Virus record (IMG/VR): IMGVR_UViG_3300023235_000008
Span: 124,001-188,000 of that record
Reading direction: 5' to 3' (one strand)
Length of the DNA stretch: 64,000 bases
Below the pieces are notes generated by a model. It searched no databases, had not been told where the DNA came from, and worked only from the letters and a program-made list of their open reading frames with translations. A program made the position numbers and the translations under genes. The stretch's first letter is position 1; each line of letters begins with the position of its first letter. Positions 13,734 through 53,677 of this stretch are shown here, piece by piece.

Positions 13734-14756
13734 TTATTCCCAAGTATAATCGTATATATATTCTTTATCATCTACCGCAATCTTGTATACATCAAAATGA
13801 TTACCAATAGTATTCCATAAATCTTCAGGAGTTCCGCTATAATCTATTTTAGCGATAGGAAGATATCCTAAACTTAGTTTTGGGTCAGTATAAGATAAAT
13901 TGTTTTGTAGTATCCAAGATTTAAATCTATCAATTTCGCCAGTATGCCATTCGTGTTGTCCATAACGTACGTCACGACCAAATTCAATATCAAATTCACC
14001 TGAATAATATTCCAGTTGCGTGATAGCATCACATACCGTTTTGGTAAGTTCGGGGGCTTCTTCATCACGCCATACTTCAAATAATGTCTTGCCAATTTGT
14101 GCCCAATGCATATAAACATATCCAAATTTACGGTCGTAACCATTTTGAACAAATAACTTTCGGTGTTCATCGGTTAATTTATATCTTGGTGCATTTTTAA
14201 ACGATGTAATTTGGCTTGGTCTTATCCATTCGGGGCTTCTAATAGCTTTGCGTTGCGACAATACCAGACTTTCTACTTCATGACATAATAAATTTAATTG
14301 CTGTATAGCCCGTTTTGTTTTTTCTTGTGCTTCATTATATAACGGACTTATTTTACCCACTGTTCCTTGTAGGATTTCAAAATGATTATGTAAGCGATTC
14401 ATAATAAGATGTTTAATCGTAAGACCGAGCATCCATTCGCCCAACGGATACCCGTCATTAAAACGCACGGTGTCGGGCGTAAAGTAATCTTCGATTACAT
14501 AATCAATTGGATCGTTATTGATTGTTTGTATATGTGTGTTAAGCTCGTTACATAGATAATCCAAATCACGTGGCGTATTTGGGAATCCATGAAAACAAAA
14601 CCCTTTTTCAATACGATTCTTGTTTATCAATAGTTCTTTTAATGCGTGTTTCCAATCATGTGCCAATGGATTGTCCAATATAACAATAGGGAATGTTACT
14701 GTATTGCCATTGGATATATTCCTGTATGTTATTTCAATCATTTCTTCCATATCCAT
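13734..14756 (-). CDS. Hypothetical protein of the glycan-modification operon
   Basis: 340-aa ORF; LNLLCHEVE, YMHWAQIGKT. Confidence 0.75.
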   Translation of the reverse strand: MDMEEMIEITYRNISNGNTVTFPIVILDNPLAHDWKHALKELLINKNRIEKGFCFHGFPNTPRDLDYLCNELNTHIQTINNDPIDYVIEDYFTPDTVRFNDGYPLGEWMLGLTIKHLIMNRLHNHFEILQGTVGKISPLYNEAQEKTKRAIQQLNLLCHEVESLVLSQRKAIRSPEWIRPSQITSFKNAPRYKLTDEHRKLFVQNGYDRKFGYVYMHWAQIGKTLFEVWRDEEAPELTKTVCDAITQLEYYSGEFDIEFGRDVRYGQHEWHTGEIDRFKSWILQNNLSYTDPKLSLGYLPIAKIDYSGTPEDLWNTIGNHFDVYKIAVDDKEYIYDYTWE

Positions 14757-15049
14757 TTATCAGGTATTTCAGTTGCGCCATCTATCGGCGCTGGTTTATG
14801 GACTTTGCCAAACAATATCGGCGGCATAGCTGGATATTCTGCACCCCGCACCATTCCTGCGCAACGATAACCAAAACTTATGATATGTGGGCCTGCGTTT
14901 AACCCAACGCTTGAACCGTAGTAGTTATAATCTATCTTCGCAAATCGACAAGTTCGCTGCATATCGTCACGGGCACAGTTTTCGCACGTCCGATCCTTCA
15001 ACTCTGGTTGGGATAACATATCCCAAAACTCTTTTTTATTCTTTTTCAT
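14738..15049 (-). CDS. FW-tag microprotein, CxxC/WxW class
   Basis: NKKEFWDMLSQP…CENC…WIWKK. Confidence 0.75.
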   Translation of the reverse strand: MKKNKKEFWDMLSQPELKDRTCENCARDDMQRTCRFAKIDYNYYGSSVGLNAGPHIISFGYRCAGMVRGAEYPAMPPILFGKVHKPAPIDGATEIPDKWIWKK

Positions 15050-15611
15050 TAATCATATTAATACCTAAGATGGCTTGACCTCTTGCATCAGTTAATGCAG
15101 TGTGATCGTGTGGAAACTTTTCAAACCAATTCTTTGGGTAATTCCTCTTTGCACTTTTTCTATAATCTAGACCTAATTTACCCGCTGCATAGCTTTTTAG
15201 ATCAAGTCCAGAAAAACCACACGGGTCTTCGCCAGCATACTTTATCAAATACCAATGATGAAACATAAAATCAAAACACGCTGGATACCCCATAAAAATA
15301 GGACGCTTTGGTAATACTTTTAAAAACTCCAAATACAGCTTCATACCACCTTCTGGCGATACGATGTTATGTCGGTGATGCGCCCACGCCTCTGGTTGTG
15401 TATCATTCAAGAACCACTCAAATGTTCCATCTTCACTTTCAATAGCAGGACCATCTTCTCTATGTCGTTCGCCATTCAAGTACCAAACTTTGGTGCCAGA
15501 TGTATATTCAATAGCAGGACCATCTTCTCTATGTAGTTCGCCATTCAAGAACCATTGTTTGTTACCATTTGCATCGGTATGAATTCCATTTTTCATGATT
15601 TTAACTTCCAC
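15036..15611 (-). CDS. Fusion of HREDGPA repeats to an N-truncated DEDDh 3'-5' exonuclease-like domain
   Basis: Two NGE(L/R)HREDGPAIE repeats, then GYPACFDFMF, LDLKSY, HTALTDA; the N-terminal DxE motif is absent. Confidence 0.7.
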   Translation of the reverse strand: MEVKIMKNGIHTDANGNKQWFLNGELHREDGPAIEYTSGTKVWYLNGERHREDGPAIESEDGTFEWFLNDTQPEAWAHHRHNIVSPEGGMKLYLEFLKVLPKRPIFMGYPACFDFMFHHWYLIKYAGEDPCGFSGLDLKSYAAGKLGLDYRKSAKRNYPKNWFEKFPHDHTALTDARGQAILGINMINEKE

Positions 15612-15802
15612 CAGAACTGTTGTTCTTTAGTTAGCACATCTTCCATTTTTACTTTATTGTCATTCAAGTACCAATATTTGTCGCCATCTGCATATTCAAT
15701 CGCAGGACCATCTTCGCGATGTCGTTCGCCATTCATGTACCAATGTTTGTCGCCATCTGCATCGGTATGCATCCCATCTGTTCTCATGATTTCAAATCTC
15801 AT
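15593..15802 (-). CDS. HREDGPA-repeat microprotein with a C-terminal FW tag
   Basis: NGERHREDGPAIEY; ends LTKEQQFWWKLKS. Confidence 0.75.
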   Translation of the reverse strand: MRFEIMRTDGMHTDADGDKHWYMNGERHREDGPAIEYADGDKYWYLNDNKVKMEDVLTKEQQFWWKLKS

Positions 15803-16024
15803 CTATTGGTTTCCACATGGGTAGTGATAATCCCGCTCGGTTCGCATATAGAGGATCGTGTCCGGGATTTTCTATACGAAAATAGCAAGTAGCAGTTCTT
15901 TTATTACTCACATGATAGGGTTCACCACATAGCGCGGCATGATACATGCGCAATTATCACAAGTTCTATCCAATACAGGAATAGACTTTAATGCTTCCCA
16001 AAACTGTTCTTTATTTAATGTCAT
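15792..16024 (-). pseudogene. FW-tag CxxC microgene with a 2-bp frameshift
   Basis: MTLNKEQFWEALKSIPVLDRTCDNC; removing one GC at ~15948-15951 continues MYHAALC…C…MWKPIDEI*, coupled to the start at 15802. Confidence 0.7.
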
Positions 16025-17360
16025 TCCAAAAATCCAAGGCGGCATCGTTATGTTTACCGAATATTTCAATCATAGTGATGGGTTGCATGCGAATACTTTC
16101 AAGATACTCAATACGCTTCTTACCTTTTCTACGACCTTCTTCAAAATCGTCTGGATACTTATTTTCCATAGTATCACGAGCAAGGAGATTTGTCAACACG
16201 TCAATGAGTGGTTTTTGATTACGGTCGGCTAATGGGGTCAACTCGTCTATCAACTCGTGGAGTATAGGATGCAGAACATCTTTTGGCAACCATAATGGAC
16301 ACATTGCCACACTGCTATCAAACTCAAAACAGACTTTAGACAAGATTTGGGTGTTATATTTTTTGGATAGGTGAAACATATTACGAACCTCGAATAAGCC
16401 GGGTGTTGTTAATGTGAAATCCAGTCTCATTTGGTTTGGTTTTTGTTGTGAAGTCAATCCTTCTTCAAAGTGTTTAATGAACTTTTGGTAGTCAAGTCCT
16501 GTTCGTATATATTCACCAATGACTCCTGTACCATCAATGCTCGCACACACTTGCCAATCCCTAAATGATTTCAACACGGTGAACAATGAAGCGTTTTTCG
16601 ATATACCGTGTCCTGACTTATTATAAATCTCACTTAGATTAGTGTTATAACGGGCATACACCTTTGACGAATGACCTGTGCGGACAAGAATCTCCATTGT
16701 TTCCCAATGCTCTTTGAACATAAGCGGTTCGCCACCAACCCAGTATATTTCTTCTAATGATTTATTAACTATGGCGTCACGTAACTCACCATACATATCA
16801 GATTGATTGTTTGCTAACTCTTTTTTATATTTCATCCAAGGGTGAAACTGGCCAGCATACTCGTCATTTTTTTTAACTTCTGATTCCCAAGATGAACTAA
16901 GCATCGGTCCACACATACGACATTTGAAGTTGCATAAGTTGCTGAACCGATAGTCAAAGCTTACAGGCTGGCCGTTGTAGTGCCCGTCTGGGTCCGTGTT
17001 TGCAATAACCTCATCCCACTTATCACCAAACAGGTGCTCAAAGTAATCGCGGTATACACTTGTGTTTAGAAGCTTACCAGTGCACACTTCACACTCAGGC
17101 AGAACTTCGTTGTTCATCATACGAAGCCTCACGCTTTTCATATGATCACTATTCCAATGTTCTTTGAGACTAGGTATAGAGAAAGTTTGCTGCTTTTCAA
17201 AAAAAGCCATTACTTCTTCTTTGGATTTGTTCTCCATGCTATCGTTAGTATCTATGTATTGTTTAAAGTTAGTAGATGGTTCGCGACTAGCACAACAGAG
17301 TCTGCGTTCACCTTGCGGTGAACAATAGCTGTGTACCCACGGGGCAATGCATTTGGTCAT
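16011..17360 (-). CDS. Radical SAM enzyme with N-terminal twitch/SPASM-like Cys domain
   Basis: CIAPW…CC…CEVC; CNFKCRMC; GGEPL; SIDG; EYIR. Confidence 0.9.
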   Translation of the reverse strand: MTKCIAPWVHSYCSPQGERRLCCASREPSTNFKQYIDTNDSMENKSKEEVMAFFEKQQTFSIPSLKEHWNSDHMKSVRLRMMNNEVLPECEVCTGKLLNTSVYRDYFEHLFGDKWDEVIANTDPDGHYNGQPVSFDYRFSNLCNFKCRMCGPMLSSSWESEVKKNDEYAGQFHPWMKYKKELANNQSDMYGELRDAIVNKSLEEIYWVGGEPLMFKEHWETMEILVRTGHSSKVYARYNTNLSEIYNKSGHGISKNASLFTVLKSFRDWQVCASIDGTGVIGEYIRTGLDYQKFIKHFEEGLTSQQKPNQMRLDFTLTTPGLFEVRNMFHLSKKYNTQILSKVCFEFDSSVAMCPLWLPKDVLHPILHELIDELTPLADRNQKPLIDVLTNLLARDTMENKYPDDFEEGRRKGKKRIEYLESIRMQPITMIEIFGKHNDAALDFWNDIK

Positions 17361-17716
17361 AGATTTGCGACAATCCTTTTCAATTCTGCAATTTTAGGCT
17401 TATTCTTCTCTATCATGAAGTCGTGAAACCCATTATGAAACCACTTATAATTATTATAACATACATCGGTTACATTTTCCATACAAAGTTTTTGTATGCT
17501 ATCCAATATACCAATAAATCTTAAATCATCTTCGGTTTCTGATCGCAACTTACTTTCAAGGTCGCGGATTGGTACTATAAAATCGCCATCATAATCTGAT
17601 AACAGAATGCTTTCCCATCCCATCGCATACAGCATATTGCGGGTGGCGGTCGATGCAGATTTAGCTATCGGGACAACGCCAAGGTCTTTTTTCGGAGACA
17701 CTATTACTTCAATCAT
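17357..17716 (-). CDS. Sulfotransferase-family-like short protein (possibly truncated)
   Basis: PIAKSAST (5'-PSB-like) and IRDLESKLRS (3'-PB-like). Confidence 0.45.
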   Translation of the reverse strand: MIEVIVSPKKDLGVVPIAKSASTATRNMLYAMGWESILLSDYDGDFIVPIRDLESKLRSETEDDLRFIGILDSIQKLCMENVTDVCYNNYKWFHNGFHDFMIEKNKPKIAELKRIVANL

Positions 17717-17925
17717 ATCGGTTTTCTACTTGTGATTTTTTTCGCTATCAAAATGACCTCGTAATCTTCTGCTTCTTTTCTTCTTTTGAAATCTGCTGGG
17801 TCTTCACACAAACTATCAAAGAAATCTTTTTTATCACGGCATTCTATTTCTTCGGGGGTTATTTCTACCGCCGCTTCATCAATGCGTGTTAATAAATCTT
17901 TAAAAAAATCGCTATCGTCAGTCAT
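17713..17925 (-). CDS. Microprotein with two FF variants of the tag
   Basis: DSDFFKDLL and DKKDFFDSLCEDP. Confidence 0.55.
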   Translation of the reverse strand: MTDDSDFFKDLLTRIDEAAVEITPEEIECRDKKDFFDSLCEDPADFKRRKEAEDYEVILIAKKITSRKPI

Positions 17926-18121
17926 TATATTTCCATTCCCATTTACTTCCAAGTTGTTGAAGTTGAAGTTTACACATAGTTCTTGCGTATTTGTTATCCG
18001 TTATCGGAAAGTCACAGTGCGACAAGTCATATGGATTGCCGTCCTCGGGCAAATACTTGCAACTTTCGCAAGACTTTACGCCATCCCATTCCAAGGCTTT
18101 CCAAAACTTATCTTTATTCAT
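17918..18121 (-). CDS. FW-tag microprotein, CxxC/WxW class
   Basis: MNKDKFWKAL…CESC…C…C…WEWKYND. Confidence 0.8.
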   Translation of the reverse strand: MNKDKFWKALEWDGVKSCESCKYLPEDGNPYDLSHCDFPITDNKYARTMCKLQLQQLGSKWEWKYND

Positions 18122-19298
18122 ATCCCATCGCTTTTGCTATGTGTGGATAAATGTCCGCAAAATCTTGCTTGCGTAATCTATCAGTTGCCTTCATATAGTT
18201 ACAAAATACTTTACCATCGCTGCCCGAACCTGCCTCAATGAAGTTAATAAGTTGTTGCCAGTTTTCATTGTATTGTGGCATGATATGCATACAATGATAC
18301 TTAATGTTATCAACCACTAGCCGTTTGCATTCCGGTGTCATATACTGGACATTCATATGCCATGGGTCGTGCAAATAGTTCCAATGGATTGAATCAAACT
18401 TACCCTCTTCTTCTGCCCACATCAATAACTGGTCAAGATAGAATACGTTTTGTATATTTATAGTGAAACAAAGTTGTCTGGTAAAAGTTGTGCTGTTAAT
18501 CCATGCTTTTTTAATAATAAATGAACGCACTTCATCCCATTTGGCACCATACCGTTCGTATTCAAATCGCTCACCAATATTATCAACAGAATATGCAAAC
18601 TCTACACTCTTAAAATCATATAGAAAATCATAATGGTGGACTTGTGTGCCATTAGTATTATAGTGCAACTCAATCGTATTTTTTACTTCGGTAGGAATAT
18701 TTGACAAGAAATCAATATGTTCTTTAATCATAAATGGTTCACCGCCAGTGAACTCAATGTACTTGATTTGTTCTACCTCAGTCATATTAATAAGGTTATC
18801 CCAAAAATGATGATTATCTTCTGGCCAGCGTCCTAGCTGAAGTTGCTTATATGCTAGATGTTCTTTGCCGCCGCCGTCACGTTCCATTTCTTCTTTAGCC
18901 CATTTCGAACTTGACCAAGAACCACAAATACGACATTTTAGATTACATTTGTTTCCAAGTTTCAAATCAAGAAACCACAAGCTATCGGGTTCAATGTCAG
19001 TGTAATCAATCTTATCCATAAGATGTTTTAGGCGAAATTGGGTATTCATACGCTTAGACATTTTGCCAGCAGATTCTTCTTCCCAACATCTCGAACACGT
19101 TTCGGGTTTCTCGCCATTCAAAAACTGTTGGCGTAGGTCTTTCATATAATCAGATTTATATGCGTCTTCGATAGTGTGTTTACGTAGGTCAATCCCCGGC
19201 ACTTCGTCACGAGCAAGACAGCACGGACGGCATCCGCCCATCGGCGTTGTTTCCATACTAATCCACGGTAACGGGCAAATATTTGGTAGTTTATTCAT
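18114..19298 (-). CDS. Radical SAM enzyme with N-terminal twitch/SPASM-like domain
   Basis: CPLPW…PCC…CSRC; CNLKCRIC; GGEPF. Confidence 0.9.
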   Translation of the reverse strand: MNKLPNICPLPWISMETTPMGGCRPCCLARDEVPGIDLRKHTIEDAYKSDYMKDLRQQFLNGEKPETCSRCWEEESAGKMSKRMNTQFRLKHLMDKIDYTDIEPDSLWFLDLKLGNKCNLKCRICGSWSSSKWAKEEMERDGGGKEHLAYKQLQLGRWPEDNHHFWDNLINMTEVEQIKYIEFTGGEPFMIKEHIDFLSNIPTEVKNTIELHYNTNGTQVHHYDFLYDFKSVEFAYSVDNIGERFEYERYGAKWDEVRSFIIKKAWINSTTFTRQLCFTINIQNVFYLDQLLMWAEEEGKFDSIHWNYLHDPWHMNVQYMTPECKRLVVDNIKYHCMHIMPQYNENWQQLINFIEAGSGSDGKVFCNYMKATDRLRKQDFADIYPHIAKAMGYE

Positions 19299-19531
19299 TT
19301 ATTAAGGTATCCCAAAACGCTGCCTTCTTTGATTTCTTCTTGCGGTCTATGTATATTTTTTTCATAAAAAATCTTCCTGCATTCACAACACGCTATTTCT
19401 TGTTCAATAATCATATATGGTTCTGAATCTTTGATTTTGACTTCTTTGGTTTCTCGGTTTACAACGAAACCGGCACCGCACCCACATCGCAACGGATTAC
19501 TTAAAGCATTCCAAAACTCGTCTTTATTTAT
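19295..19531 (-). CDS. FW-tag zinc-ribbon microprotein with ATA at the expected start
   Basis: ATA-NKDEFWNALSNPLRCGCG…CCEC. Confidence 0.65.
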   Translation of the reverse strand: MNKDEFWNALSNPLRCGCGAGFVVNRETKEVKIKDSEPYMIIEQEIACCECRKIFYEKNIHRPQEEIKEGSVLGYLNK

Positions 19532-22432: not shown

Positions 22433-22679
22433 TGAACATTATTCCAATCCGTTTCTGTTCTTTTTTGTATTGTAGAACGCTATGAAAATGGCTTTTCCAC
22501 GATTCTTGTTTTTCAGGATCGCTTACAATCTCGTCACAATCCTTACAAACTTCACATAACTTATAAATCATATACAGCTTTTTTTGTTTGCCTACCGTAA
22601 CTGTTGTGTTGGCGGCTTTGATGAGGATTGTAGGATGAATGCATTTAGTCAAACCATTCCAAAACTGTTCCTTATCCAT
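22422..22679 (-). CDS. FW-tag Cys-containing microprotein
   Basis: MDKEQFWNGLTKCIH…CEVCKDC. Confidence 0.75.
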   Translation of the reverse strand: MDKEQFWNGLTKCIHPTILIKAANTTVTVGKQKKLYMIYKLCEVCKDCDEIVSDPEKQESWKSHFHSVLQYKKEQKRIGIMFSER

Positions 22680-22788
22680 AAGGTTCCCATTCTTCACCAG
22701 TGAAAATCAACAATCCTTTTTCTTCGTCGTGGATTATTTCACCTTCAAATGGCACTACTGGCGGTGGCGAGGGCGTATCATCTGTCAT
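22672..22788 (-). CDS. 38-aa microprotein consisting of one tail-fibre-type motif (not in ORF track)
   Basis: MTDDTPSPPPVVPFEGEIIHDEEKGLLIFTGEEWEPYG; overlaps both neighbours. Confidence 0.65.
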   Translation of the reverse strand: MTDDTPSPPPVVPFEGEIIHDEEKGLLIFTGEEWEPYG

Positions 22789-24142
22789 ATTTGTTGCTCC
22801 TATACATACAATCATCCCAGAACTCAATCATCTCTGGAAACGTTTCTAAGAAGTTAGTGCCCCTACGGTTATCGTGTTCATTGAAGAATCGATAGAAGTT
22901 AACACGTGCTTCATTTAAATCTTTCTCGCCCATAGGAGTTTTCATATGGTCAAGGTTTCTCACCATCTTGGCAGCTTCGTAATCCTTGAATCCATCATAA
23001 CAAGTAGGACAAGACTCTGGACTATTACCTAAGTATTTTACCATATTTTCAAGCTGAAATCTATATGATTCGGGCAATATTTGAATCGATTGCCATACTG
23101 GATCAGTAAGAACTGGGATGTCAAACCACACACGCTGATAATCGTTGCTGTAAATCTTACGAAGACCAAGGATAGCGGTAAACAACTCAGGGAGACTAGT
23201 GATACTAAGGTTATTTAGGGTAATAATAAATGTAACACTATTCCTATGTGGAATGTCGTGTAAGAATGTATTGACGTTATCCCATAAACGATTGAAGTCA
23301 AGCCCGTGTCGAATATACTCAGCCTTTGAACCAAATGCATCCAATGAAACAAACTGCATAAAATGTTCTACATTCTCGCCGTCGCAAATACGTTTCGTAT
23401 AATCCATATACTTGTCAAAGATTTTAGGCTCTACACTAAAGTTGCTCGTTACGTTTAAGTGAAGGTCTGGTTTTGGATTTTCTAAAACATAGTCAAATAC
23501 TTTATAGGTGTTCGGGTCCATTAATGGTTCACCTCCTGTCATTCTGAAATGACGCAATGTTGGATACATTGCTGCCCAATCTTCCCAAAACTTTTCTACA
23601 TATGGATTATGTTCACGTTGTGGGATTGGGCGACGGTCACCAGCAAAATGCGCAGGATGGTTGTGCGGGGTAATGGTTGGCCACGCACCTTGTGATTTTG
23701 TTTCTGCCATCCATGATGAACTATATTGTGGCGAACAATAGCTACACTTTAAGTTACAGGCGTTATTAAAGTTCACCTCAACATACGATGGATTGACAAC
23801 GCCGCCCGCAACAACCTTATCAAAGTTATCCATTGCCCAAGGCTCACCACTACGATAGTGACGGTCTGACAGATTTCCTTGGTCTTCCATCTTCCAGCAA
23901 TAATCACAACCAGTAGGTCGCTTACCCGCAACCATCATTTGCTTTTGGATATCTTTTTCGGATGTTTCGTTTAACGTTTCACGTTTCAAATCCATCTTGT
24001 GCGGTGGCGGATGATAACATGAGTTAGTATGACCTGTTGTTAGGTGAAGGCTGGTTTGTAACCATTTAGCCAAGCAGAATGTTTCGGAAACATCGTCCAG
24101 TTTCTTCTTGGCGTGTAATGCATCGTCGTTATAGTTACTCAC
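22778..24142 (-). CDS. Radical SAM enzyme with N-terminal twitch/SPASM-like domain
   Basis: FCLAKW…SCYHP…CDYCW; CNLKCSYC; GGEPL. Confidence 0.9.
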   Translation of the reverse strand: MSNYNDDALHAKKKLDDVSETFCLAKWLQTSLHLTTGHTNSCYHPPPHKMDLKRETLNETSEKDIQKQMMVAGKRPTGCDYCWKMEDQGNLSDRHYRSGEPWAMDNFDKVVAGGVVNPSYVEVNFNNACNLKCSYCSPQYSSSWMAETKSQGAWPTITPHNHPAHFAGDRRPIPQREHNPYVEKFWEDWAAMYPTLRHFRMTGGEPLMDPNTYKVFDYVLENPKPDLHLNVTSNFSVEPKIFDKYMDYTKRICDGENVEHFMQFVSLDAFGSKAEYIRHGLDFNRLWDNVNTFLHDIPHRNSVTFIITLNNLSITSLPELFTAILGLRKIYSNDYQRVWFDIPVLTDPVWQSIQILPESYRFQLENMVKYLGNSPESCPTCYDGFKDYEAAKMVRNLDHMKTPMGEKDLNEARVNFYRFFNEHDNRRGTNFLETFPEMIEFWDDCMYRSNKYDR

Positions 24143-25053
24143 CAGTTCTCCCGCTTTCTGATTATATCAATCTCGGTTGTCATAAAGTCTTCCTGTACGT
24201 GATTCTTTTTATAGAAGTGTTTAAAAAACTTTGATTGGTCACTATCATATCGCACCAATGGGATATTCAATCGTGACTTAACAATATCAATGGTTGCTTT
24301 GATATATCTATCATCGTTATTATTCGCATAACCATCGTATTGCATTTTCAATACGTCGAAGTCTTGAACGCCCGTATAATCCCAATCGGTTAGCATAACG
24401 GCGTGTAATCCGAATAAAGCACCATCCATTGCTGAAACACCAAACTCGGCGTCGGCTCCTGTATTCAACCATACCATAAGATTATCAAGGTTCTTATCGT
24501 GAACCATTTGCTCAAACTCTGGTAGTGTAGGACGAACACCTTTATTCAGACACATCTTTACGCCTTCACGAAACCCTGCTCTCCAAGCATTGAACTCACT
24601 TTGATTGGGATGCGTAGTTCCGTAAACATTCCACATAGCGTGATAGTTAGGGTCATAGCAAAACTCTACGTTGTTTTCATCTGACCCATCACTATTTTCG
24701 TGCGTTCGCATATTCATAATGAAATCACGATGCCAAATACTAATACCGCCGTTGCCGTATCTCAATCCATTTATTGCATTGATTGCCTTCCAACGATATG
24801 CACTTGGTACATCAGGTGCTTCAAATGTTTGATTAAAGAAGTTTGGATCAGGCATATGGTCACCATCAATCAACACAAACCATTCGGTTTCACTGATTTC
24901 AGCTGCCGCTTTGTGTGCGGAATCACTGCCTTTTACACCATCGACACGATTTGCCCATGGCACCATATTCTGGATTTCTACCCAAAACTCTTCTTTTTTT
25001 GGTTCGTCAAATGTTAGATAGACCACATCAAGGTCTGCAACATCAATCTTCAT
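24139..25053 (-). CDS. GT-A fold glycosyltransferase-like protein
   Basis: GVKGSDSAHKAAA, DxD motif IDGD, NGLRYGNGG, AWRAGFREGVKM. Confidence 0.7.
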   Translation of the reverse strand: MKIDVADLDVVYLTFDEPKKEEFWVEIQNMVPWANRVDGVKGSDSAHKAAAEISETEWFVLIDGDHMPDPNFFNQTFEAPDVPSAYRWKAINAINGLRYGNGGISIWHRDFIMNMRTHENSDGSDENNVEFCYDPNYHAMWNVYGTTHPNQSEFNAWRAGFREGVKMCLNKGVRPTLPEFEQMVHDKNLDNLMVWLNTGADAEFGVSAMDGALFGLHAVMLTDWDYTGVQDFDVLKMQYDGYANNNDDRYIKATIDIVKSRLNIPLVRYDSDQSKFFKHFYKKNHVQEDFMTTEIDIIRKRENW

Positions 25054-25222
25054 ATTCTACCCAAAAGTCTTTTTCAAAATCAAACGTATATTGAATGTCG
25101 GTAGTAGTATCTCGGTATACGTGAATACCAATGCCGATATTCTTGTCTGCCTGTAAATAACTCTTATTAGGCTGCGGTGGCATTTGTAATACTTGCCAAA
25201 ACTTATCTCTGCTTATGTTCAA
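25043..25222 (-). CDS. FW-tag microprotein (PPQP class)
   Basis: SRDKFWQVLQMPPQP…FEKDFWVE; TTG start assumed. Confidence 0.7.
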   Translation of the reverse strand: MNISRDKFWQVLQMPPQPNKSYLQADKNIGIGIHVYRDTTTDIQYTFDFEKDFWVEYED

Positions 25223-25400
25223 TCCATTTATCCTTTTCATAATTAAAAACCCATTTTAAACCCGTCTGTATATCTACCCAAATAGTAACCATAGGAAGTT
25301 CTTTATTATATATACCGAGCTGATATACCGTCAACATACTTTCTTCGCTCGGCTGTGGGGGTTCGCCTAACCCTTCCCAAAAATCTTCTTTACTTAACAC
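25203..25400 (-). CDS. FW-tag microprotein (PPQP class)
   Basis: GTG-LSKEDFWEGLGEPPQP…YEKDKWIE. Confidence 0.7.
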   Translation of the reverse strand: MLSKEDFWEGLGEPPQPSEESMLTVYQLGIYNKELPMVTIWVDIQTGLKWVFNYEKDKWIEHKQR

Positions 25401-25539
25401 AAATCCATTCTTTTCCATTCCAAATCTCCAATCCACCTGTGTCGTTGTTATAAAATACGGAACCCACTGGGCGGGTCGGCGGTGGTGCCTTCAATGCTTC
25501 CCAAAAATCTTCTTTATTCAAAGTCTTTTCGGTATTCAT
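25390..25539 (-). CDS. FW-tag microprotein carrying a tail-fibre-type motif
   Basis: LNKEDFWEALKAPPPTRPVGSVFYNNDTGGLEIWNGKEW. Confidence 0.75.
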   Translation of the reverse strand: MNTEKTLNKEDFWEALKAPPPTRPVGSVFYNNDTGGLEIWNGKEWICVK

Positions 25540-25861
25540 AGAAGTCTTCGGTGCCGATGAAGTATGGGTTATTTTTTCTAGTGCCATACATTCCAGTCTC
25601 CGATTTGACAAGGTTGTATGTTTGTGGCTTAGATGGCGTTTTAATCTCGCCATCAATGATTTTATTATCACTTCTTATACTTTCCCATACGCTGCGCTCA
25701 ACGATAATGAAATCACCTTCGGGTGGTTCAACATTGTATTCAATAGCGACTTGTTTAAGGATATCGCCAGTTTCCTTGTTATAGTATAACCTATATTCAG
25801 GCGTAAAGTCAATAACTGGTTCAGCATCAAATAGAACTAATCCTTCTAAAAAGTTACTCAA
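25514..25861 (-). CDS. Hypothetical protein (EYRLYYNKETG motif)
   Basis: ORF in operon; TTG start at 25861 assumed from overlap. Confidence 0.65.
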   Translation of the reverse strand: MSNFLEGLVLFDAEPVIDFTPEYRLYYNKETGDILKQVAIEYNVEPPEGDFIIVERSVWESIRSDNKIIDGEIKTPSKPQTYNLVKSETGMYGTRKNNPYFIGTEDFYEYRKDFE

Positions 25862-25997
25862 AATCTTCCTCTCTATATTCTTCTCCAAATATCTCTTTTA
25901 ATCCCGGCATTAACTGTCGCAATACAGCAGCACGGCGAATAGCCTCTTTACTTTTCACTGGATTTTTTAAAGTTTTCCAAAACTCATGTTTATTCAT
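25854..25997 (-). CDS. FW-tag microprotein carrying a capsid-N-terminus-like peptide (47 aa, not in ORF track)
   Basis: MNKHEFWKTLKNPVKSKEAIRRAAVLRQLMPGLKEIFGEEYREEDFE. Confidence 0.75.
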   Translation of the reverse strand: MNKHEFWKTLKNPVKSKEAIRRAAVLRQLMPGLKEIFGEEYREEDFE

Positions 25998-26185
25998 TTC
26001 TTGTTCCATTCCCAGTGCTTACGATCTCCCGTTGCACTCACTAATATACTCACACAATCCACGTGTCCCGGCGCTGTTGCGTGTTTACAACTAAAACACG
26101 TTTTATCGTTTCCTAATAGAAACCAAAACTAGTTATCGTTTCCTAATAGAAACCAAAACTCTTCTTTACTACAATCGTTGTTCGT
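25994..26185 (-). pseudogene. Inactivated FW-tag CxxC/WxW microgene
   Basis: ACG-NNDCSKEEFWFLLGNDN*FWFLLGNDKTCFSCKH…C…WEWNKK; ACG at the start position and a TAG created by a duplication. Confidence 0.75.
26103..26160. repeat. 28-bp exact tandem duplication (period 30)
   Basis: ttatcgtttcctaatagaaaccaaaact at 26103-26130 and 26133-26160. Confidence 0.95.
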
Positions 26186-27020
26186 ATCGTCTGATGAGTT
26201 CGTCACTGCAAAAATCCTTCTGTTGATAATGGAATGGAAACATTTGATAGTATCCTCCCACAATAAAATCCATATCTTCCGTCAACGCCCAACTCACCAT
26301 ATCCGTCCACTGATTGGAATGAAAGCCCTGTAGTTCTGGCTTCATATGAACAAAGGTCGGTTGAACACCCGGCATATAACAACGTTCTTCACCAATCATC
26401 AATGCAGCTAACGCATATACTTCATCGGTTGTTGGGCGTTCAATACGGCAGTTCTTTAAAATATTATCCCGATACATTGACCAGTTCTCAAATATTTCTT
26501 TAGCCGCCATAAAAAAGTCAGCCATTGTCTTTGAATATCTGAAATAACTAAAACCATTATATGTATTTAGAAGGCTGTTATCATCGAATACTTTTCGGAA
26601 TCGGCGGTCAGTAATAAGGTTGCCACGATAATCAACTACGTCCGTAGTTATACAAATATCCTTGGCTCTCATATGATCCCACCAATGTGAAACATCACGT
26701 GTGAAAATCATATCAACATCAAGGTTAACTGTCTCTTTAAATGGCGTAGCGTGGTACAGTTTCCAAGCATTAGCCAACTTCCATTCATCGCCAGCAGCGG
26801 CGTCACCGAAAGGTATATCAACAATGTAATCAAATACTTTGCGATGTTTATCGGTGATTTGCGCTTTAGTCTTTTCATCAACGGCGATAGCATACTTGTT
26901 AATGCGTTGTGTTGCCTTGATAGAAAGGGCTTGTAAATATGCTATACGCAAGTAATCAACATCGCTGTTCTGAACAAAAGCAAAATATCCTTGCTGGTCT
27001 TTGAACTGTTCTTTATTCAT
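26169..27020 (-). CDS. GT8-like glycosyltransferase
   Basis: TPFKETVNLDVDMIF (DxD), TTDEVYALA, FVHMK, FHYQQK. Confidence 0.75.
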   Translation of the reverse strand: MNKEQFKDQQGYFAFVQNSDVDYLRIAYLQALSIKATQRINKYAIAVDEKTKAQITDKHRKVFDYIVDIPFGDAAAGDEWKLANAWKLYHATPFKETVNLDVDMIFTRDVSHWWDHMRAKDICITTDVVDYRGNLITDRRFRKVFDDNSLLNTYNGFSYFRYSKTMADFFMAAKEIFENWSMYRDNILKNCRIERPTTDEVYALAALMIGEERCYMPGVQPTFVHMKPELQGFHSNQWTDMVSWALTEDMDFIVGGYYQMFPFHYQQKDFCSDELIRRYEQRL

Positions 27021-27216
27021 TGTTCCATTCCCATTTATCATTGCCGCCAGCTTGACGTTGATCTACCATACCGCATCTAGTGCATCTATCGCACACGTCA
27101 AGATCATTGTAGTCCGCATCCCTCCCGATAATATGCAAAGTATCTTCCCATTTACAGTTGCCGCATACTCTTTCAGCAGGTTCACATAAAGTTTTCCAAA
27201 ACTCCTGTTTATTCAT
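27013..27216 (-). CDS. FW-tag microprotein, CxxC/WxW class
   Basis: MNKQEFWKTLCEP…CGNC…CDRCTRC…WEWNNE. Confidence 0.8.
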   Translation of the reverse strand: MNKQEFWKTLCEPAERVCGNCKWEDTLHIIGRDADYNDLDVCDRCTRCGMVDQRQAGGNDKWEWNNE

Positions 27217-27424
27217 TTTCACCATCCCAATGCCAATGGTCAGCTGCTCGTCTGATTTCCCGCGGGGGTATACCCGATATAGCACGAACGCAAGTATACT
27301 TAACGTGTAGACTACATTCCATGCCAAGGCTAGGTCCAGCGTCCATCATATGCGAACAGTTATTACACGTATGTGTCGATGGTTCACGCAGTGTGTCCCA
27401 AAACTTTTCTTTATCTTTATTCAT
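27209..27424 (-). CDS. FW-tag microprotein, CxxC/WxW class
   Basis: MNKDKEKFWDTLREP…CNNC…C…C…WHWDGENE. Confidence 0.8.
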   Translation of the reverse strand: MNKDKEKFWDTLREPSTHTCNNCSHMMDAGPSLGMECSLHVKYTCVRAISGIPPREIRRAADHWHWDGENE

Positions 27425-27632
27425 ATTTTCCATTCCATTCATATATACTATAATGACGGACGTATGTGTAATCGCCGTTTTCTTTTTCTCGTTTTAACGC
27501 CATCATAGCATCATTAAAGTTACAGGAAAAACAAGGTGACGGTGCATTTTTTGATTTTCCTTCATGAATACAAGTGTTACAACTCGGCTTTGGGCTTTTT
27601 AATGTTTCCCAAAACTTTTCTTTATCGTTCAT
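27417..27632 (-). CDS. FW-tag microprotein, CxxC/WxW class
   Basis: MNDKEKFWETLKSP…CNTC…CFSC…YEWNGKYE. Confidence 0.8.
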   Translation of the reverse strand: MNDKEKFWETLKSPKPSCNTCIHEGKSKNAPSPCFSCNFNDAMMALKREKENGDYTYVRHYSIYEWNGKYE

Positions 27633-27819
27633 CGACACCATTCCATTCCCAATAATCTTCAGTAATAAAGAAACCTTCAGTAAAGAAACGAAACCTACGA
27701 TGCTTAATACAATCTGCGTCCAGTGAACACCCTTGGTCTACCAAATGAATACAGTTTCGGCAGTTATGGTGTGTTGGTTCACGCAATGCTTTCCAAAACT
27801 TTTCTTTATCTTTATTCAT
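27622..27819 (-). CDS. FW-tag microprotein, CxxC/WxW class
   Basis: MNKDKEKFWKALREP…CRNC…C…C…WEWNGVDER. Confidence 0.8.
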   Translation of the reverse strand: MNKDKEKFWKALREPTHHNCRNCIHLVDQGCSLDADCIKHRRFRFFTEGFFITEDYWEWNGVDER

Positions 27820-27825
27820 ATAAGA

Positions 27826-28086
27826 TTATGGAAAGACAGGCAGGGGTTCATCGTCGTCGGTGTCGTCTTTGCCATTCCATTTCCAATAACTGTATTCGCC
27901 GTGCTGTTCACTCACGTGTGCGCTTTTACAACGACCACAAAATGCACTACCATTCACATTACCAAAATCGTGATACGAATATCTTTCGGGAGAATAGAAA
28001 CCGGGACGTGTACAAGTACCACATGATTTTGCAGGTGTTTTTAAATCTTGCCAGAACTTTTCTTTATCATCGAGGTTTTTATACAT
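27826..28086 (-). CDS. FW-tag microprotein, CxxC/WxW class
   Basis: DDKEKFWQDLKTP…CGTC…CGRC…WKWNGK. Confidence 0.8.
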   Translation of the reverse strand: MYKNLDDKEKFWQDLKTPAKSCGTCTRPGFYSPERYSYHDFGNVNGSAFCGRCKSAHVSEQHGEYSYWKWNGKDDTDDDEPLPVFP

Positions 28087-28088
28087 TA

Positions 28089-28970
28089 TTATTTTTTCTT
28101 TCCGGTGCCTGATAACTGCGTCGGTATATATGGACAGTAATAAAATCCTTCATCCATCACTTCCGTTTTACCACGTAACCCATCCCAAAACAGTTTCTTT
28201 CTATTAAGAATATCAATCTGTTTTATAAGCGAAGGTTTATTCATAACGTGTAAATCAAGACCATTTACTTTGGTTTGATATTCCTTGCCATTATTATCAT
28301 ATTCAATGACGACCGTGCCATCCTGCCTAATATCTACCACTTCTTCTTGTGTTCCGACCGAAGCCAATGGAAACGTGAAATGGTTTTCTGTATCATTATA
28401 TCCCGAAAGCAACTGTAATGCAATACTTAATGCAAAATCATTTCGATATGGGGTGGGTCTGAAGTTGAATAAATGCCCGTAATAATGATAGTTTTGGCGA
28501 ACTTCTTGCATCATATCAAATACCGACTTGGAAAACTCAGTCTTTTTAAAATAGATACACGTTGCCCAACGCATAGGAAAACTTGTCTTGCTCATCATTC
28601 TATCAGATGCAAATGTATTTGTGCCCGTAACGTCATATACCTTATCGGCGCATTGAAACTCATGCGCTGAACCGAAATATTTCTTCAAGTTATCTGACAT
28701 AATCAAATAGTCAGCATCAAGTAATAATGTTTCATCATACGGCGAAAGGGAATATGCGGTCATGCGATCCGTATTATGCCAATCCACTTGTTCATACGTA
28801 TTATCACGCCATATAAATGTTCGACTGTTAGCGTTTGTCGGATTTCCAGTGATAATCGTGGTCGGAATATTCAAATGATGAAGTATTAGCTGGCGATTAA
28901 ACTCGGCAATCTTTTCATAATCAATCTGATCATTATTGTAAGCGAAGATTAATGCGCCCTTTGTTGTCAT
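28089..28970 (-). CDS. GT8-like glycosyltransferase with a fused FW-tag/capsid-like C-terminal tail
   Basis: SPYDETLLLDADY (DxD), YRNDFALSIA, DLHVMNK; tail RKKLFWDGLRGKTEVMDEGFYYCPYIPTQL. Confidence 0.75.
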   Translation of the reverse strand: MTTKGALIFAYNNDQIDYEKIAEFNRQLILHHLNIPTTIITGNPTNANSRTFIWRDNTYEQVDWHNTDRMTAYSLSPYDETLLLDADYLIMSDNLKKYFGSAHEFQCADKVYDVTGTNTFASDRMMSKTSFPMRWATCIYFKKTEFSKSVFDMMQEVRQNYHYYGHLFNFRPTPYRNDFALSIALQLLSGYNDTENHFTFPLASVGTQEEVVDIRQDGTVVIEYDNNGKEYQTKVNGLDLHVMNKPSLIKQIDILNRKKLFWDGLRGKTEVMDEGFYYCPYIPTQLSGTGKKK

Positions 28971-29191
28971 TGTTTATGCTCAATCATAGATTTATGATAT
29001 TTGTGAGACATATTGAAAAAGAATAAATCCTTTTCACTCTTGAACTTTAAATAATACATTCCGCCCCAATGACCTTCAATATCAAATGACCATTTAAAAC
29101 GATCAAACGTTTGAAGGTTCACAAGCGTTATGTGCCACTCGTCTATATCGTTAAGGGCTGAAAAGAACTCAAGTTTATGCCATTTGCTCAT
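28967..29191 (-). CDS. Microprotein with C-terminal FKSEKDLFFF module
   Basis: ATGA-coupled at both ends. Confidence 0.65.
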   Translation of the reverse strand: MSKWHKLEFFSALNDIDEWHITLVNLQTFDRFKWSFDIEGHWGGMYYLKFKSEKDLFFFNMSHKYHKSMIEHKQ

Positions 29192-29490
29192 TTAGGAAAG
29201 TTCCTTAAAATGTTCGCCATATCTTTAATCGTGTCGTGTTTTTCTTTTGCCTCTACTTCTTCGGGACGAATGATACGATAGGTTTCAAGCTGAATACGAT
29301 AATATTCTAAGACTTCACTGTTTGAATATCGCCCCGAATAGTCGTAACCATCGGGGTCCAGCTTTTCAAGTTCGGCAATATGCTTTAGAATATTTTCTTT
29401 TGCTCGTTCTTCAATCAACGAATAAGGCGGTGGCAATGGACACTGTAATGCATTCCAGAACTCTTCTTTAGATAAATCATCTTCAATCAT
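29188..29490 (-). CDS. FW-tag microprotein, helical payload
   Basis: LSKEEFWNALQCP. Confidence 0.7.
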   Translation of the reverse strand: MIEDDLSKEEFWNALQCPLPPPYSLIEERAKENILKHIAELEKLDPDGYDYSGRYSNSEVLEYYRIQLETYRIIRPEEVEAKEKHDTIKDMANILRNFPK

Positions 29491-29822: not shown

Positions 29823-29827
29823 AGGTG

Positions 29828-29856
29828 ATTATATCACGTATTGGAATATATGTCAA
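29828..29856 (-). promoter_or_regulatory. Perfect sigma70 promoter
   Basis: TTGACA-N17-TATAAT with extended TG; ATG only 5 nt downstream. Confidence 0.85.
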
Positions 29857-53656: not shown

Positions 53657-53677
53657 TATTATGATATTATATAAATA
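53643..53677 (+). promoter_or_regulatory. Overlapping sigma70-type and late promoters
   Basis: TTGACA-N16-TATTAT and TATAAATA (53670-53677). Confidence 0.7.

What the first reader, a model, noticed from the sequence alone, without database searches (positions are those of the whole stretch)
14738..29490. Candidate new system: ~20 microgenes sharing an FW tag fused to variable payloads
Seen: a motif [NSD]-K-[ED]-x-F-W-x-x-L-x-x-P begins ORFs starting at 15049, 16024, 18121, 19531, 22679, 25222, 25400, 25539, 25997, 26185, 27216, 27424, 27632, 27819, 28086 and 29490. Variants occur at 17925 and 21098, one copy is fused to the tail of the GT at 28089, and two lie far away on the + strand (51539, 53858). 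After the tag the sequences diverge. About ten are CxxC…C…C…W-x-W mini-domains of variable length; others are zinc ribbons, helical segments or virion-protein fragments. Every gap between the five rSAM genes holds at least one, all overlapped with their neighbours, and several were missed by the ORF track. Inference: a modular library in which a constant amphipathic helix docks on one common partner (protease or chaperone such as a MoxR-vWA pair, a scaffold, or a packaging site) while the payload supplies target specificity, as expected for a rapidly turning-over anti-defence or anti-competitor arsenal.
Basis: partly seen in the sequence, partly recalled or inferred. Interest (0 to 1): 0.92.

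Follow-up and report, generated by a model that had tools for sequence, protein, structure and literature searches.

The report
Expanded four-cysteine small-protein family in jumbo phage
A large uncultured phage carries at least 37 copies of a previously unnamed family of tiny four-cysteine proteins that share a conserved starting helix, sit between its larger genes and turn over fast, which looks like a diversified toolkit against the host but has no proven function.

Summary
The motif [KR]-[ED..]-x-F-W-x-x-L occurs 19 times in the window, 17 of them on the minus strand between 15040 and 29472, almost always 1-10 residues after a start codon. Shuffled windows give 0-0.2 hits.

Conservation is at the amino-acid level. 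Leu uses six codons and Pro all four.

The motif is not mainly a tag on random payloads. It is the N-terminal helix of an unnamed protein family of 55-100 aa: helix, P-x(4)-C-x-[NT]-C-K-aromatic, two more Cys at variable spacing, then W-E-W-[DN]-G. The family forms 179 metagenomic clusters and has no Pfam, PHROG, NCBIfam, PADLOC or cultured-phage match.

The host contig is a 230-kb relative of Rak2/Atu_ph07-type jumbo phages. It carries at least 37 copies in head-to-tail overlapping arrays.

Turnover is fast:
- A syntenic relative has its copies at different junctions.
- Copies are mosaic.
- Three copies in the region are broken.

The helix also heads at least five unrelated payloads and has diverged there while keeping F, W and L, so it probably has a function of its own.

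A link to the radical SAM genes is not supported, because each occurs without the other. The function (an early-expressed binder or anti-host library) is inferred, not shown.

The parts
29828..29856 (-). Consensus sigma-70-type promoter (TTGACA, 17 nt, TG-n-TATAAT) at the head of the whole minus-strand block. Its -10 element ends 5 nt before the ATG at 29822.
   Evidence: 12 of 12 matches plus the extended -10 TG. Sequence read.
29188..29490 (-). FW helix plus an 82-aa helical payload (100 aa). Non-canonical, no Cys domain. Its start overlaps the stop of the upstream ORF by 4 nt.
   Evidence: 16.9 bits on the tag HMM. No homolog outside this phage lineage.
28089..28970 (-).
   Evidence: regex hit. 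Below 8 bits on the tag HMM. No Pfam or NCBIfam hit.
27826..28086 (-). Canonical family member (86 aa; C-x2-C, C-x2-C, W-K-W-N-G).
   Evidence: Family HMM 50.6 bits.
27622..27819 (-). Canonical family member (65 aa).
   Evidence: Family HMM 62.4 bits.
27417..27632 (-). Canonical family member (71 aa). Its start region is the other-frame reading of the upstream copy's W-E-W-N-G.
   Evidence: Family HMM 47.4 bits.
27209..27424 (-). Canonical family member (71 aa). Used for structure model 2.
   Evidence: Family HMM 66.2 bits. AlphaFold2: helix at residues 3-13 with pLDDT 80-84, the rest 55-72.
27013..27216 (-). Canonical family member (67 aa). Mosaic with a copy on contig L093.
   Evidence: Family HMM 57.8 bits. 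The central ~95 nt are about 97% identical to L093:14033, while the flanks have diverged.
25994..26206 (-). Broken canonical copy. A perfect 30-bp tandem duplication (26103-26160) creates an in-frame TAG. Piece 1 carries the tag; piece 2 carries C-x2-C through W-E-W-N.
   Evidence: period 30, 1.9 copies, 100% match; piece 2, 15.9 bits.
25854..25997 (-). FW helix plus a 34-aa helical tail (47 aa). Non-canonical.
   Evidence: 24.1 bits on the tag HMM.
25390..25539 (-). FW helix plus a 30-aa segment resembling the N-terminal motif of virion or tail-fibre-like proteins.
   Evidence: Weak PHROG hits (2803, 1325, 8309; E 0.006-0.016). The same PHROGs hit the structural ORF 30838-32136.
25043..25418 (-). 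Two paralogous ORFs (starts 25222/25240 and 25400/25418): FW helix, P-P-Q-P, then a beta-rich segment ending E-K-D-x-W.
22422..22679 (-). FW helix plus a 72-aa payload with C-x2-C-x2-C, lying between rSAM5 and rSAM4.
   Evidence: 16.7 bits on the tag HMM.
20835..21113 (-). Variant-tag ORF (S-K-E-S-F-I-E-A-L) with a zinc-ribbon-like body, between rSAM4 and rSAM3. Conserved at the same junction in L091.
   Evidence: phmmer E 1e-10 to L091 5167-5484, which carries an S-K-E-E-L-W tag.
19295..19531 (-). FW ORF with no ATG, GTG or TTG start. The motif begins at the stop codon of rSAM3. Either non-canonically initiated or dead.
   Evidence: tag HMM 21.4 bits.
17918..18121 (-). Canonical family member (67 aa), directly after rSAM2.
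   Evidence: Family HMM 34.3 bits.
17713..17952 (-). 79-aa ORF with two F-F variants of the tag.
   Evidence: tag HMM 9.5 bits for the second variant.
15792..16024 (-). Truncated canonical copy (38 aa, stop included at 15908). The rest of the domain appears in another frame (ORF 15792-15953). Likely frameshifted.
   Evidence: family HMM 33.7 bits covering profile positions 5-30 only.
14738..15049 (-). Canonical family member with a long insert (103 aa).
   Evidence: Family HMM 35.7 bits.
16011..24142 (-). Five radical SAM genes of the NCBIfam type with an N-terminal twitch domain: 16011-17360, 18114-19298, 19528-20838, 21095-22432, 22778-24142. They are neighbours of the family, not demonstrated partners.
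   Evidence: NF033640: 261-392 bits against a cutoff of 170. Syntenic orthologs at 61-67% identity in L091.
51539..51871 (+). FW helix 12 residues after the ATG, plus a payload matching the C-terminal part of PHROG 17597.
   Evidence: E 3.9e-8; residues 38-87 against profile positions 179-229 of 243.
53858..54034 (+). Compact canonical member (58 aa; C-x2-C, C-x2-C). Used for structure model 1. A sigma-70-like promoter lies at 53643-53670.
   Evidence: Family HMM 57.0 bits. AlphaFold2 pLDDT 69.7. Promoter matches 11 of 12 with TG.

Best explanation
SHOWN. The region holds 17 members, derivatives or wrecks of one unnamed family of small phage proteins. Two more lie elsewhere in the window. The roughly 100 kb of the 230-kb contig that I could read holds at least 37.

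The canonical protein is a single domain of 55-100 aa with these parts:
- an N-terminal amphipathic helix, K-E-x-F-W-x-x-L-x-x-P;
- 12-14 residues after the Phe, a knuckle C-x-[NT]-C-K-[HYWF];
- two further Cys at very variable spacing (four Cys in all in 77% of members);
- a C-terminal W-E-W-[DN]-G.

The genes sit head to tail. The W-E-W-[DN]-G codons of one gene, read in another frame, give G-N-G-M, which is the ribosome-binding region and ATG of the next gene.

The arrays fill junctions between larger genes: radical SAM enzymes here, and sugar or amino-acid-modifying enzymes elsewhere in the genome. They turn over quickly:
- A syntenic relative has its copies at different junctions.
- Copies are recombinant mosaics.
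- Three copies in this region are broken.
- The helix has been joined to at least five unrelated payloads, where it has diverged in DNA but kept its key residues.

INFERRED:
- The four Cys bind a metal, most simply zinc, which holds together a mini-scaffold whose inter-cysteine loops are free to vary.
- The helix and the Trp-rich C-terminus form the constant part. The helix additionally serves as a shared recognition surface.
- The block is transcribed early from a consensus sigma-70 promoter.
- The family acts as a diversified set of small binders against host proteins, for takeover or counter-defence.
For: - Motif statistics and start-proximal position.
- Amino-acid-level constraint with all synonymous Leu and Pro codons in use.
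- The one nucleotide oddity, N-A-G before the Phe codon, is a genome-wide effect of AATT avoidance (138 seen, 517 expected).
- Family breadth: a profile of 25 members finds 179 clusters at E <= 1e-3 among 1.84 billion representatives. All but one of the 150 listed hits are 54-166 aa, and the matches are mostly end to end.
- Cys pattern: 105 of 137 members have exactly four Cys, and 128 of 137 have C-x2-C first.
- Predicted helix at residues 3-13 with pLDDT about 80 in two models.
- Copy number in the home contig: 37 unique hits, 27 of them near full length.
- Overlapping arrays and the G-N-G-M alternative frame.
- Synteny with different junction occupancy in L091.
- Mosaicism.
- Broken copies.
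- Tags on foreign payloads are 64-86% identical in DNA to the nearest other tag.
- Promoters.
- Phage-only contexts, next to T4-type gp13, gp15, sheath, terminase, UvsX-like and DnaB genes.
Against: - No experiment or database annotation bears on function.
- The structure models are only moderately confident outside the helix (pLDDT 55-72) and match nothing in PDB or BFVD. Metal binding and the fold are therefore unproven.
- The second Cys pair is C-x2-C in only 27 of 105 members, which is unusual for a classical zinc ribbon.
- The non-canonical payloads have no homologs elsewhere, so some may not be functional proteins at all.
- Early expression rests on promoter consensus alone.
- Several contigs with arrays come from the same lake samples and could be parts of one larger genome. 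Clearly independent contexts number about four (L088, L091, L092, L096).
Confidence: 0.55

Rival explanations
1. RiPP system. The FW proteins are precursor peptides, the conserved helix is the leader, and the adjacent radical SAM enzymes cross-link or otherwise modify the Cys-rich cores.
For: - The layout is a conserved N-terminus, variable Cys-rich remainder, and one small gene in every gap between five radical SAM genes.
- The same interleaving is seen in the syntenic relative L091.
Against: - The two gene sets are not co-distributed. FW arrays occur without any radical SAM gene in L088, L092, L093/94, L095, L096/97 and in the home-contig clusters L046 and L059.
- L002 has at least 8 paralogs of these radical SAM genes and no FW gene.
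- In L091 the rSAM2/rSAM1 junction is empty, while 7 or more copies pile up at one other junction.
- The C-terminus is conserved as strongly as the 'leader'.
- Four conserved Cys and a fold-like profile fit a folded metal-binding domain.
- The enzymes carry an N-terminal twitch/SPASM domain, and Pfam and NCBIfam detected no peptide-recognition domain.
Confidence: 0.08
2. Virion address label. [quoted passage not shown] It routes many different small proteins into the prohead, from which they are injected with the DNA as a counter-defence arsenal.
For: - A short conserved N-terminal helix sits on otherwise diverse small proteins, including non-homologous payloads.
- The phage is a distant T4-type myovirus.
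- One array lies among T4-type neck and tail genes.
Against: - Most copies share the whole domain, not just the leader.
- The residue where a T4-type prohead protease would cut (Glu two residues after the conserved Leu) is the commonest residue there but is found in only 14 of 68 tags, and it is followed by Pro.
- The only strong promoters found are the sigma-70 (early) type. The T4 late-promoter consensus is not enriched (9 seen, 6.6 expected).
- No virion proteomics exist for this uncultured phage.
Confidence: 0.15
3. Small iron-sulfur proteins. The four Cys hold a [4Fe-4S] cluster (HiPIP-like), and the proteins supply electrons or clusters to the neighbouring radical SAM enzymes and other metalloenzymes.
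For: - HiPIP entries account for two of the eight, all non-significant, PDB profile matches (E 0.6), and the P-x4-C-x-N-C-x-aromatic knuckle aligns with theirs.
- Both of the only two Foldseek PDB hits for model 2 are HiPIPs.
- The size, the four Cys and the aromatic-rich composition are similar.
- The copies lie next to Fe-S enzymes.
Against: - None of these matches is significant (E 0.6; Foldseek E 6.8-9, probability 0.04).
- None of 108 members hits the Pfam HiPIP model or any Fe-S family.
- The contexts of the third and fourth Cys are not conserved.
- At least 37 hypervariable paralogs per genome is not what a redox carrier needs.
- Arrays occur far from any Fe-S enzyme.
Confidence: 0.07
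4. Junction cassette with little protein function. The conserved ends persist mainly because they carry the translational-coupling signals (start-proximal A-rich codons; a 3' end that encodes the next gene's ribosome-binding site and ATG). They also give homology for recombination, so the elements spread between genes as nearly neutral or selfish filler.
For: - The W-E-W-[DN]-G codons double as G-N-G-M of the next ORF in many family members.
- Genes overlap by 4-29 nt.
- Copies are mosaic with breakpoints inside the ORF.
- Many copies are truncated or broken.
- Junction occupancy is variable.
Against: - Conserved residues use all synonymous codons.
- The four Cys and the knuckle lie outside any junction signal, yet are near-invariant.
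- The C-terminal W-E-W is kept in a single copy that has no overlapping downstream gene (L092).
- The family is maintained across at least 179 clusters at 50% identity.
Confidence: 0.1

Closest known systems
T4 internal proteins (IPI, IPII, IPIII and their variants) with the capsid targeting sequence
   Same: Short conserved N-terminal segment heading small proteins that are otherwise diverse. The loci are hypervariable between related phages. A counter-defence role is known for IPI* (PMC3012670).
   Different: - Here most copies share a whole four-Cys domain and a conserved C-terminus.
- No conserved protease site follows the helix.
- Copy number is more than ten times higher.
- Packaging is untested.
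- No sequence comparison with the T4 leader was made.
RiPP precursor plus radical SAM/SPASM maturase clusters (for example SCIFF/ranthipeptides, sactipeptides)
   Same: Small Cys-rich ORFs with a conserved N-terminus lie next to radical SAM enzymes that carry an auxiliary-cluster domain.
   Different: - The two gene sets are not co-distributed.
- The twitch/SPASM domain is N-terminal (NF033640).
- No peptide-recognition domain, protease or exporter was seen.
- The C-terminal motif is conserved, and the products are of folded-domain size (55-100 aa).
Zinc-ribbon and small one-domain zinc-finger proteins (for example ribosomal L37ae and L36, RNA polymerase subunit E''; from my own knowledge, the many C-P-x-C-G micro-proteins of haloarchaea)
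   Same: Four Cys in a protein of about 60 aa, beginning with a C-x2-C knuckle. Single members give weak hits to L37ae, RpoE'' and L36. The family is multi-copy within one genome.
   Different: - The second pair is C-x2-C in only 27 of 105 members.
- The knuckle is C-x-N-C-K-aromatic rather than C-P-x-C-G.
- The FW helix and W-E-W-[DN]-G have no counterpart.
- No significant profile or fold match was found.
Hyperplastic regions of T4-type genomes, where small early ORFs are shuffled between conserved genes (promoter-early stem-loop cassettes; from my own knowledge of the T4 literature)
   Same: Small, fast-turning-over ORFs sit between conserved genes. They are driven by sigma-70-type early promoters, and their content differs between close relatives.
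   Different: - Here the shuffled units are paralogs of one family.
- They overlap one another instead of being separated by intergenic promoter/stem-loop repeats.
- The conserved sequence is coding.
High-potential iron-sulfur proteins (HiPIP)
   Same: Similar size, four Cys, a P-x4-C-x-N-C-x-aromatic knuckle and aromatic-rich composition. HiPIPs recur among the weak PDB hits and are the only Foldseek hits for model 2.
   Different: - All matches are non-significant.
- No Pfam HiPIP hit in 108 members.
- Spacing and context of the third and fourth Cys are not conserved.
- The setting is cytoplasmic and phage-encoded, with dozens of paralogs.

Membership tests
RiPP precursor / radical SAM maturase system | Precursor gene and maturase gene co-occur across related loci | tested here: not met
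   FW arrays occur without a radical SAM gene in L088, L092, L093/94, L095, L096/97, L046 and L059. The radical SAM cluster in L002 (at least 8 paralogs) has no FW gene.
RiPP precursor / radical SAM maturase system | Maturase carries a leader-recognition (RRE-type) domain and a C-terminal SPASM/twitch domain | tested here: not met
   Pfam and NCBIfam show only Radical_SAM plus an N-terminal SPASM/twitch domain (NF033640). No RRE-type domain was detected.
RiPP precursor / radical SAM maturase system | Post-translational modification of the core peptide | not testable with these tools
   Needs co-expression and mass spectrometry.
T4-type capsid-targeted internal proteins | Short conserved N-terminal leader on otherwise unrelated small proteins | tested here: inconclusive
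   True for about 8 non-canonical ORFs. However, most copies are homologous over their full length.
T4-type capsid-targeted internal proteins | Prohead-protease cleavage site (Leu/Ile-x-Glu) at the end of the leader | tested here: not met
   Glu two residues after the conserved Leu occurs in only 14 of 68 distinct tags, and the next residue is Pro in 55 of 68.
T4-type capsid-targeted internal proteins | Presence of the proteins in the virion | not testable with these tools
   The phage is uncultured and no proteome exists.
Classical zinc ribbon | Two C-x2(-4)-C knuckles | tested here: inconclusive
   The first pair is C-x2-C in 128 of 137 members. The second pair is C-x2-C in 27 of 105 and otherwise spaced 1-32 residues apart.
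HiPIP (Pfam PF01355) | Significant match to the family model or fold | tested here: not met
   No Pfam hit in 108 members. PDB profile E 0.6. Foldseek E 6.8-9.
NF033640 radical SAM protein with N-terminal twitch domain (the five large neighbours) | Score above the NCBIfam cutoff (170 bits) over the full model | tested here: met
   260.9-391.7 bits, covering about positions 1-397 of 398.
Any curated protein family (Pfam-A, PHROGs v4, NCBIfam 20, PADLOC 2.0) | Significant hit for the FW proteins | tested here: not met
   Searches give only scattered single hits, none significant or recurrent. tblastn against 50,697 phage records gives no match.

The most novel reading that the evidence does not exclude
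The FW helix is a portable address label. A jumbo phage uses it to route more than 40 different small proteins to one common partner, either the prohead core (for injection) or a phage-encoded chaperone or hub. Most of these proteins are built on a hypervariable four-Cys scaffold and some on unrelated payloads. Together they would form a rapidly diversifying, recombining arsenal against host defences, a phage counterpart of a variable-binder repertoire.
Probability: 0.2. Interest if true: 0.85.

Novelty: new variant of a known kind. Interest (0 to 1): 0.62.

Why it matters
Phage genomes rarely carry dozens of paralogs of one gene. This family has no name in any library I could search, yet it forms 179 clusters in public metagenomes and reaches about one copy per 3 kb of the roughly 100 kb of this 230-kb contig that I could read.

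Its architecture is a constant helix, a metal-type knuckle, hypervariable loops and a constant Trp-rich end. Combined with visible recombination and gene death, this is the signature expected of proteins in an arms race.

If the proteins bind host factors, the family would be a rich source of small natural inhibitors, and a model for how phages diversify counter-measures. If the helix is a routing signal, it would be a second example, independent of T4's, of a packaging or recruitment label, and potentially a useful tool.

Even on the most conservative reading, the family deserves a model in Pfam or PHROGs. That would improve annotation of the small 'hypothetical' ORFs that crowd jumbo-phage genomes.

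Tried and rejected
1. Nucleotide-level repeat or regulatory element. Rejected. Synonymous codons vary freely at the conserved residues. The one odd bias, N-A-G before the Phe codon, is genome-wide and follows from strong AATT avoidance.
2. Known-family searches. Pfam, PHROGs, NCBIfam and PADLOC were run on window members, and Pfam and NCBIfam also on 108 family members. Nothing was found.
3. Cultured phages. megablast of the region and tblastn of two members against 50,697 phage records gave no match.
4. Cellular genomes. The pattern M-N-K-E-E-F-W in 185,579 species-representative genomes gave 25 chance stretches and no relative. Sensitivity was limited to that exact start.
5. Fold comparison. 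Two AlphaFold2 models (pLDDT 68-70) gave no significant Foldseek match in PDB or BFVD. A profile search of PDB sequences gave only E 0.4-0.8 hits.
6. The search for related loci with broad family alignments failed because no stretch was conserved enough.
7. Homologs of the non-canonical payloads. A local phmmer search against all fetched loci and one database search for the 100-aa ORF found only the same phage lineage.
8. T4 late-promoter consensus is not enriched.
9. MoxR/vWA or another obvious partner in the window was not found among the ORFs scanned.
10. Literature. No paper mentions the sample ids, and no paper was found on the function of the NF033640 family.
11. The tag-like stretch inside the 293-aa ORF is treated as doubtful (below 8 bits).

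Full report
**What is there.** The window is part of IMG/VR contig 3300023235_000008, which is 230,059 bp long. Its baseplate wedge protein is about 35% identical to those of Atu_ph07, SCTP-2, GAP32 and other Rak2-type jumbo myoviruses. Other genes include an RnlA-like ligase, sugar-nucleotide enzymes and a carbamoyltransferase. From 29822 down to 13734 the minus strand is one tightly packed block of genes. Neighbours overlap by 4-29 nt or are 6 nt or less apart. A perfect sigma-70 consensus promoter (TTGACA, 17 nt, TG-n-TATAAT) lies at 29856-29828 at the head of the block.

- A six-frame scan finds x-[KR]-[EDQHK]-x-F-W-x-x-L 19 times. Seventeen hits are on the minus strand between 15040 and 29472, and two are on the plus strand at 51575 and 53867.
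- In 16 of 19 cases the motif lies 1-10 residues after an ATG.
- A tag HMM built from relatives outside the window gives 17 hits of 10 bits or more in the window and none in ten shuffles.
- Among 68 distinct tag DNAs from the window and relatives, Leu uses six codons, Pro uses four and Phe uses two. The constraint is therefore on the protein.
- The one nucleotide peculiarity is that the codon before Phe ends in G in 16 of 19 copies. This is a genome-wide codon-pair effect. AATT is strongly avoided (138 found, 517 expected), and E, K and Q codons before Phe are G-ending about 70% of the time in all long genes.

**It is a family, not just a tag.**
- Eight window ORFs align over their whole length: helix, C-x2-C, further Cys, then W-x-W-[ND]-G.
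- A DNA pattern search of IMG/VR showed further clusters elsewhere on the same contig (L046, L059, L054, L019, L079) and on near-identical sibling contigs.
- A profile of 25 members, searched against 1.84 billion representative proteins, found 179 clusters at E <= 1e-3. All but one of the 150 listed hits are 54-166 aa, and the matches are mostly end to end.
- The consensus is M-[ND]-K-[ED]-x-F-W-x-x-L-x-x-P-x(4)-C-x-[NT]-C-K-[HYWF] ... C ... C ... W-E-W-[DN]-G.
- Exactly four Cys occur in 105 of 137 members. The first pair is C-x2-C in 128 of 137. The other two spacings range from 1 to 32 residues.
- Two AlphaFold2 models place a helix at residues 3-13 (pLDDT about 80). The rest is modelled less confidently (55-72).
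- Neither model has a significant match in PDB or BFVD.
- No Pfam, PHROG, NCBIfam or PADLOC model matches.
- No cultured phage record matches.
- A search for the exact start M-N-K-E-E-F-W in 185,579 species-representative genomes found no relative.

**Expansion and array structure.**
- In the roughly 100 kb of the home contig that I could read there are 37 unique family hits, 27 of them near full length.
- The copies sit head to tail. Many predicted proteins in the database begin with G-N-G-M before the tag. That is the other-frame reading of the upstream copy's W-E-W-[DN]-G codons.
- The 3' end of one gene therefore encodes the ribosome-binding region and ATG of the next.
- W-E-W is also kept in a single copy with no overlapping downstream gene (L092). 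It is therefore not only a junction signal.

**Turnover.**
- Locus L091, from an unrelated sequencing run, is syntenic with the window. Its order is a 310-aa gene, rSAM5, rSAM4, rSAM3, rSAM2, rSAM1, then a 375-aa gene, at 56-67% identity except the last gene, which is 34% identical.
- L091 carries 13 family copies at different junctions. Seven or more lie between rSAM3 and rSAM2, and none lies between rSAM2 and rSAM1, where the window has three small ORFs.
- The copy at 27013-27216 shares a central stretch of about 95 nt at about 97% identity with a copy on L093, while both flanks have diverged. This is a recombinant mosaic.
- Three copies in the region are damaged:
  - A perfect 30-bp tandem duplication at 26103-26160 creates a stop codon.
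  - The copy at 16024 stops after the first knuckle and continues in another frame.
  - The copy at 19531 has no canonical start.
- Truncated copies are also common in L093 and L095.

**The helix on other payloads.**
- About eight ORFs carry the helix without the four-Cys body:
  - helical tails (29490, 25997);
  - a P-P-Q-P beta class (25400, 25222);
  - a fragment resembling a virion protein (25539, weak PHROG hits);
  - a fragment matching the C-terminal part of PHROG 17597 (51539, E 4e-8);
  - two Cys-containing oddities (22679, 19531).
- Their tag DNA is only 64-86% identical to the nearest other tag, yet K, F, W and L are kept.
- These payloads have no homologs outside this phage lineage. 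Whether all of them are functional proteins is open.

**Relation to the radical SAM genes.**
- All five belong to NCBIfam NF033640, radical SAM with an N-terminal twitch domain (261-392 bits against a cutoff of 170).
- The interleaving invites a RiPP reading, but the two gene sets are not co-distributed.
- FW arrays lie next to DnaB and an exonuclease (L088); next to T4-type gp13, gp15 and sheath genes (L093/94); next to terminase and a RecA-like gene (L095); next to a 5'-3' exonuclease (L096); and next to unrelated enzymes on the home contig (L046).
- L002 has at least eight paralogs of these radical SAM genes and no FW gene.
- I therefore regard the radical SAM genes as neighbours in a gene-dense variable region, not as partners.

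**Most likely mechanism (inferred).** The canonical protein is a metal-stabilised mini-domain. Its constant parts (helix, first knuckle, Trp-rich end) hold variable loops. The family is expressed early from host-type promoters. It probably acts as a diversified set of small binders of host proteins. The helix probably also provides a common interaction surface, which would explain its retention on foreign payloads.

**Rivals:**
- a T4-like capsid-targeting label (concept from PMC3012670; no conserved cleavage site here);
- RiPP precursors;
- HiPIP-like Fe-S proteins (recurrent but non-significant matches);
- nearly neutral junction cassettes.

**Novelty.** The family itself is unnamed and absent from curated libraries and from cultured phages. 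The kinds of thing it resembles are known: small Cys-rich early phage proteins, leader-plus-variable-body families, and hyperplastic regions of T4-type genomes. I rate it a new variant of a known kind. Interest is moderate to high because of the extreme copy number and the clear signs of an arms-race mode of evolution.

Noticed in passing
whole window: The tetranucleotide AATT is strongly under-represented (138 found, 517 expected from base composition). GATC is also low (122 against 230). This suggests restriction-site avoidance, and it shapes codon pairs: E, K and Q codons before Phe are mostly G-ending.
   Followed up: partly
window 29822-29856 (-): The -10 element of the perfect sigma-70 promoter ends only 5 nt before the ATG of the first ORF (29487-29822). 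The transcript may therefore be leaderless, or the true start codon lies further downstream.
   Followed up: no
window 15036-15611 and 15593-15802 (-); L059, L073: MORN-type repeat proteins (W-[FY]-L-N-G-x-x-H-R-E-D-G-P-A repeats) sit inside the arrays. Several end with a tag-like C-terminal helix, K-E-Q-F-W-W-K-L. They could be unrelated, or a candidate partner or relative of the FW helix.
   Followed up: no
L046:7215-7505 (home contig, outside the window): One family member has a doubled tag: an F-F version followed 19 residues later by a normal F-W version. The 79-aa ORF at window 17713-17952 also has two F-F tag variants. Tag duplication therefore seems to recur.
   Followed up: no
window 32956-46059 (-): A giant 4,367-aa ORF lies between tail-fibre-like genes and the 1,163-aa baseplate wedge gene. 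It is presumably a structural or fibre protein. I did not examine it.
   Followed up: no
L002 (IMGVR_UViG_3300024346_004143): A 39-kb viral contig carries at least eight tandem or divergent paralogs of the radical SAM genes with an N-terminal twitch domain, plus two copies of the 304-aa neighbour gene, with no FW genes. This radical SAM expansion is a feature in its own right, and its substrate is unknown.
   Followed up: partly
window 53670-53677 (+): A T4 late-promoter-like TATAAATA overlaps the end of a sigma-70-like promoter (53643-53670) upstream of the FW gene at 53858. Overall the motif is not enriched in the window (9 found, 6.6 expected).
   Followed up: partly
L046 4-636, 692-1507 and 1504-2025 (home contig): The ORFs on either side of a 271-aa ORF rich in C-x2-C pairs (possibly endonuclease-like) look as if they could be two parts of one interrupted enzyme gene (an intein or a homing-endonuclease insertion?). 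This is a guess from the ORF translations alone; no family search or alignment was run on these ORFs.
   Followed up: no
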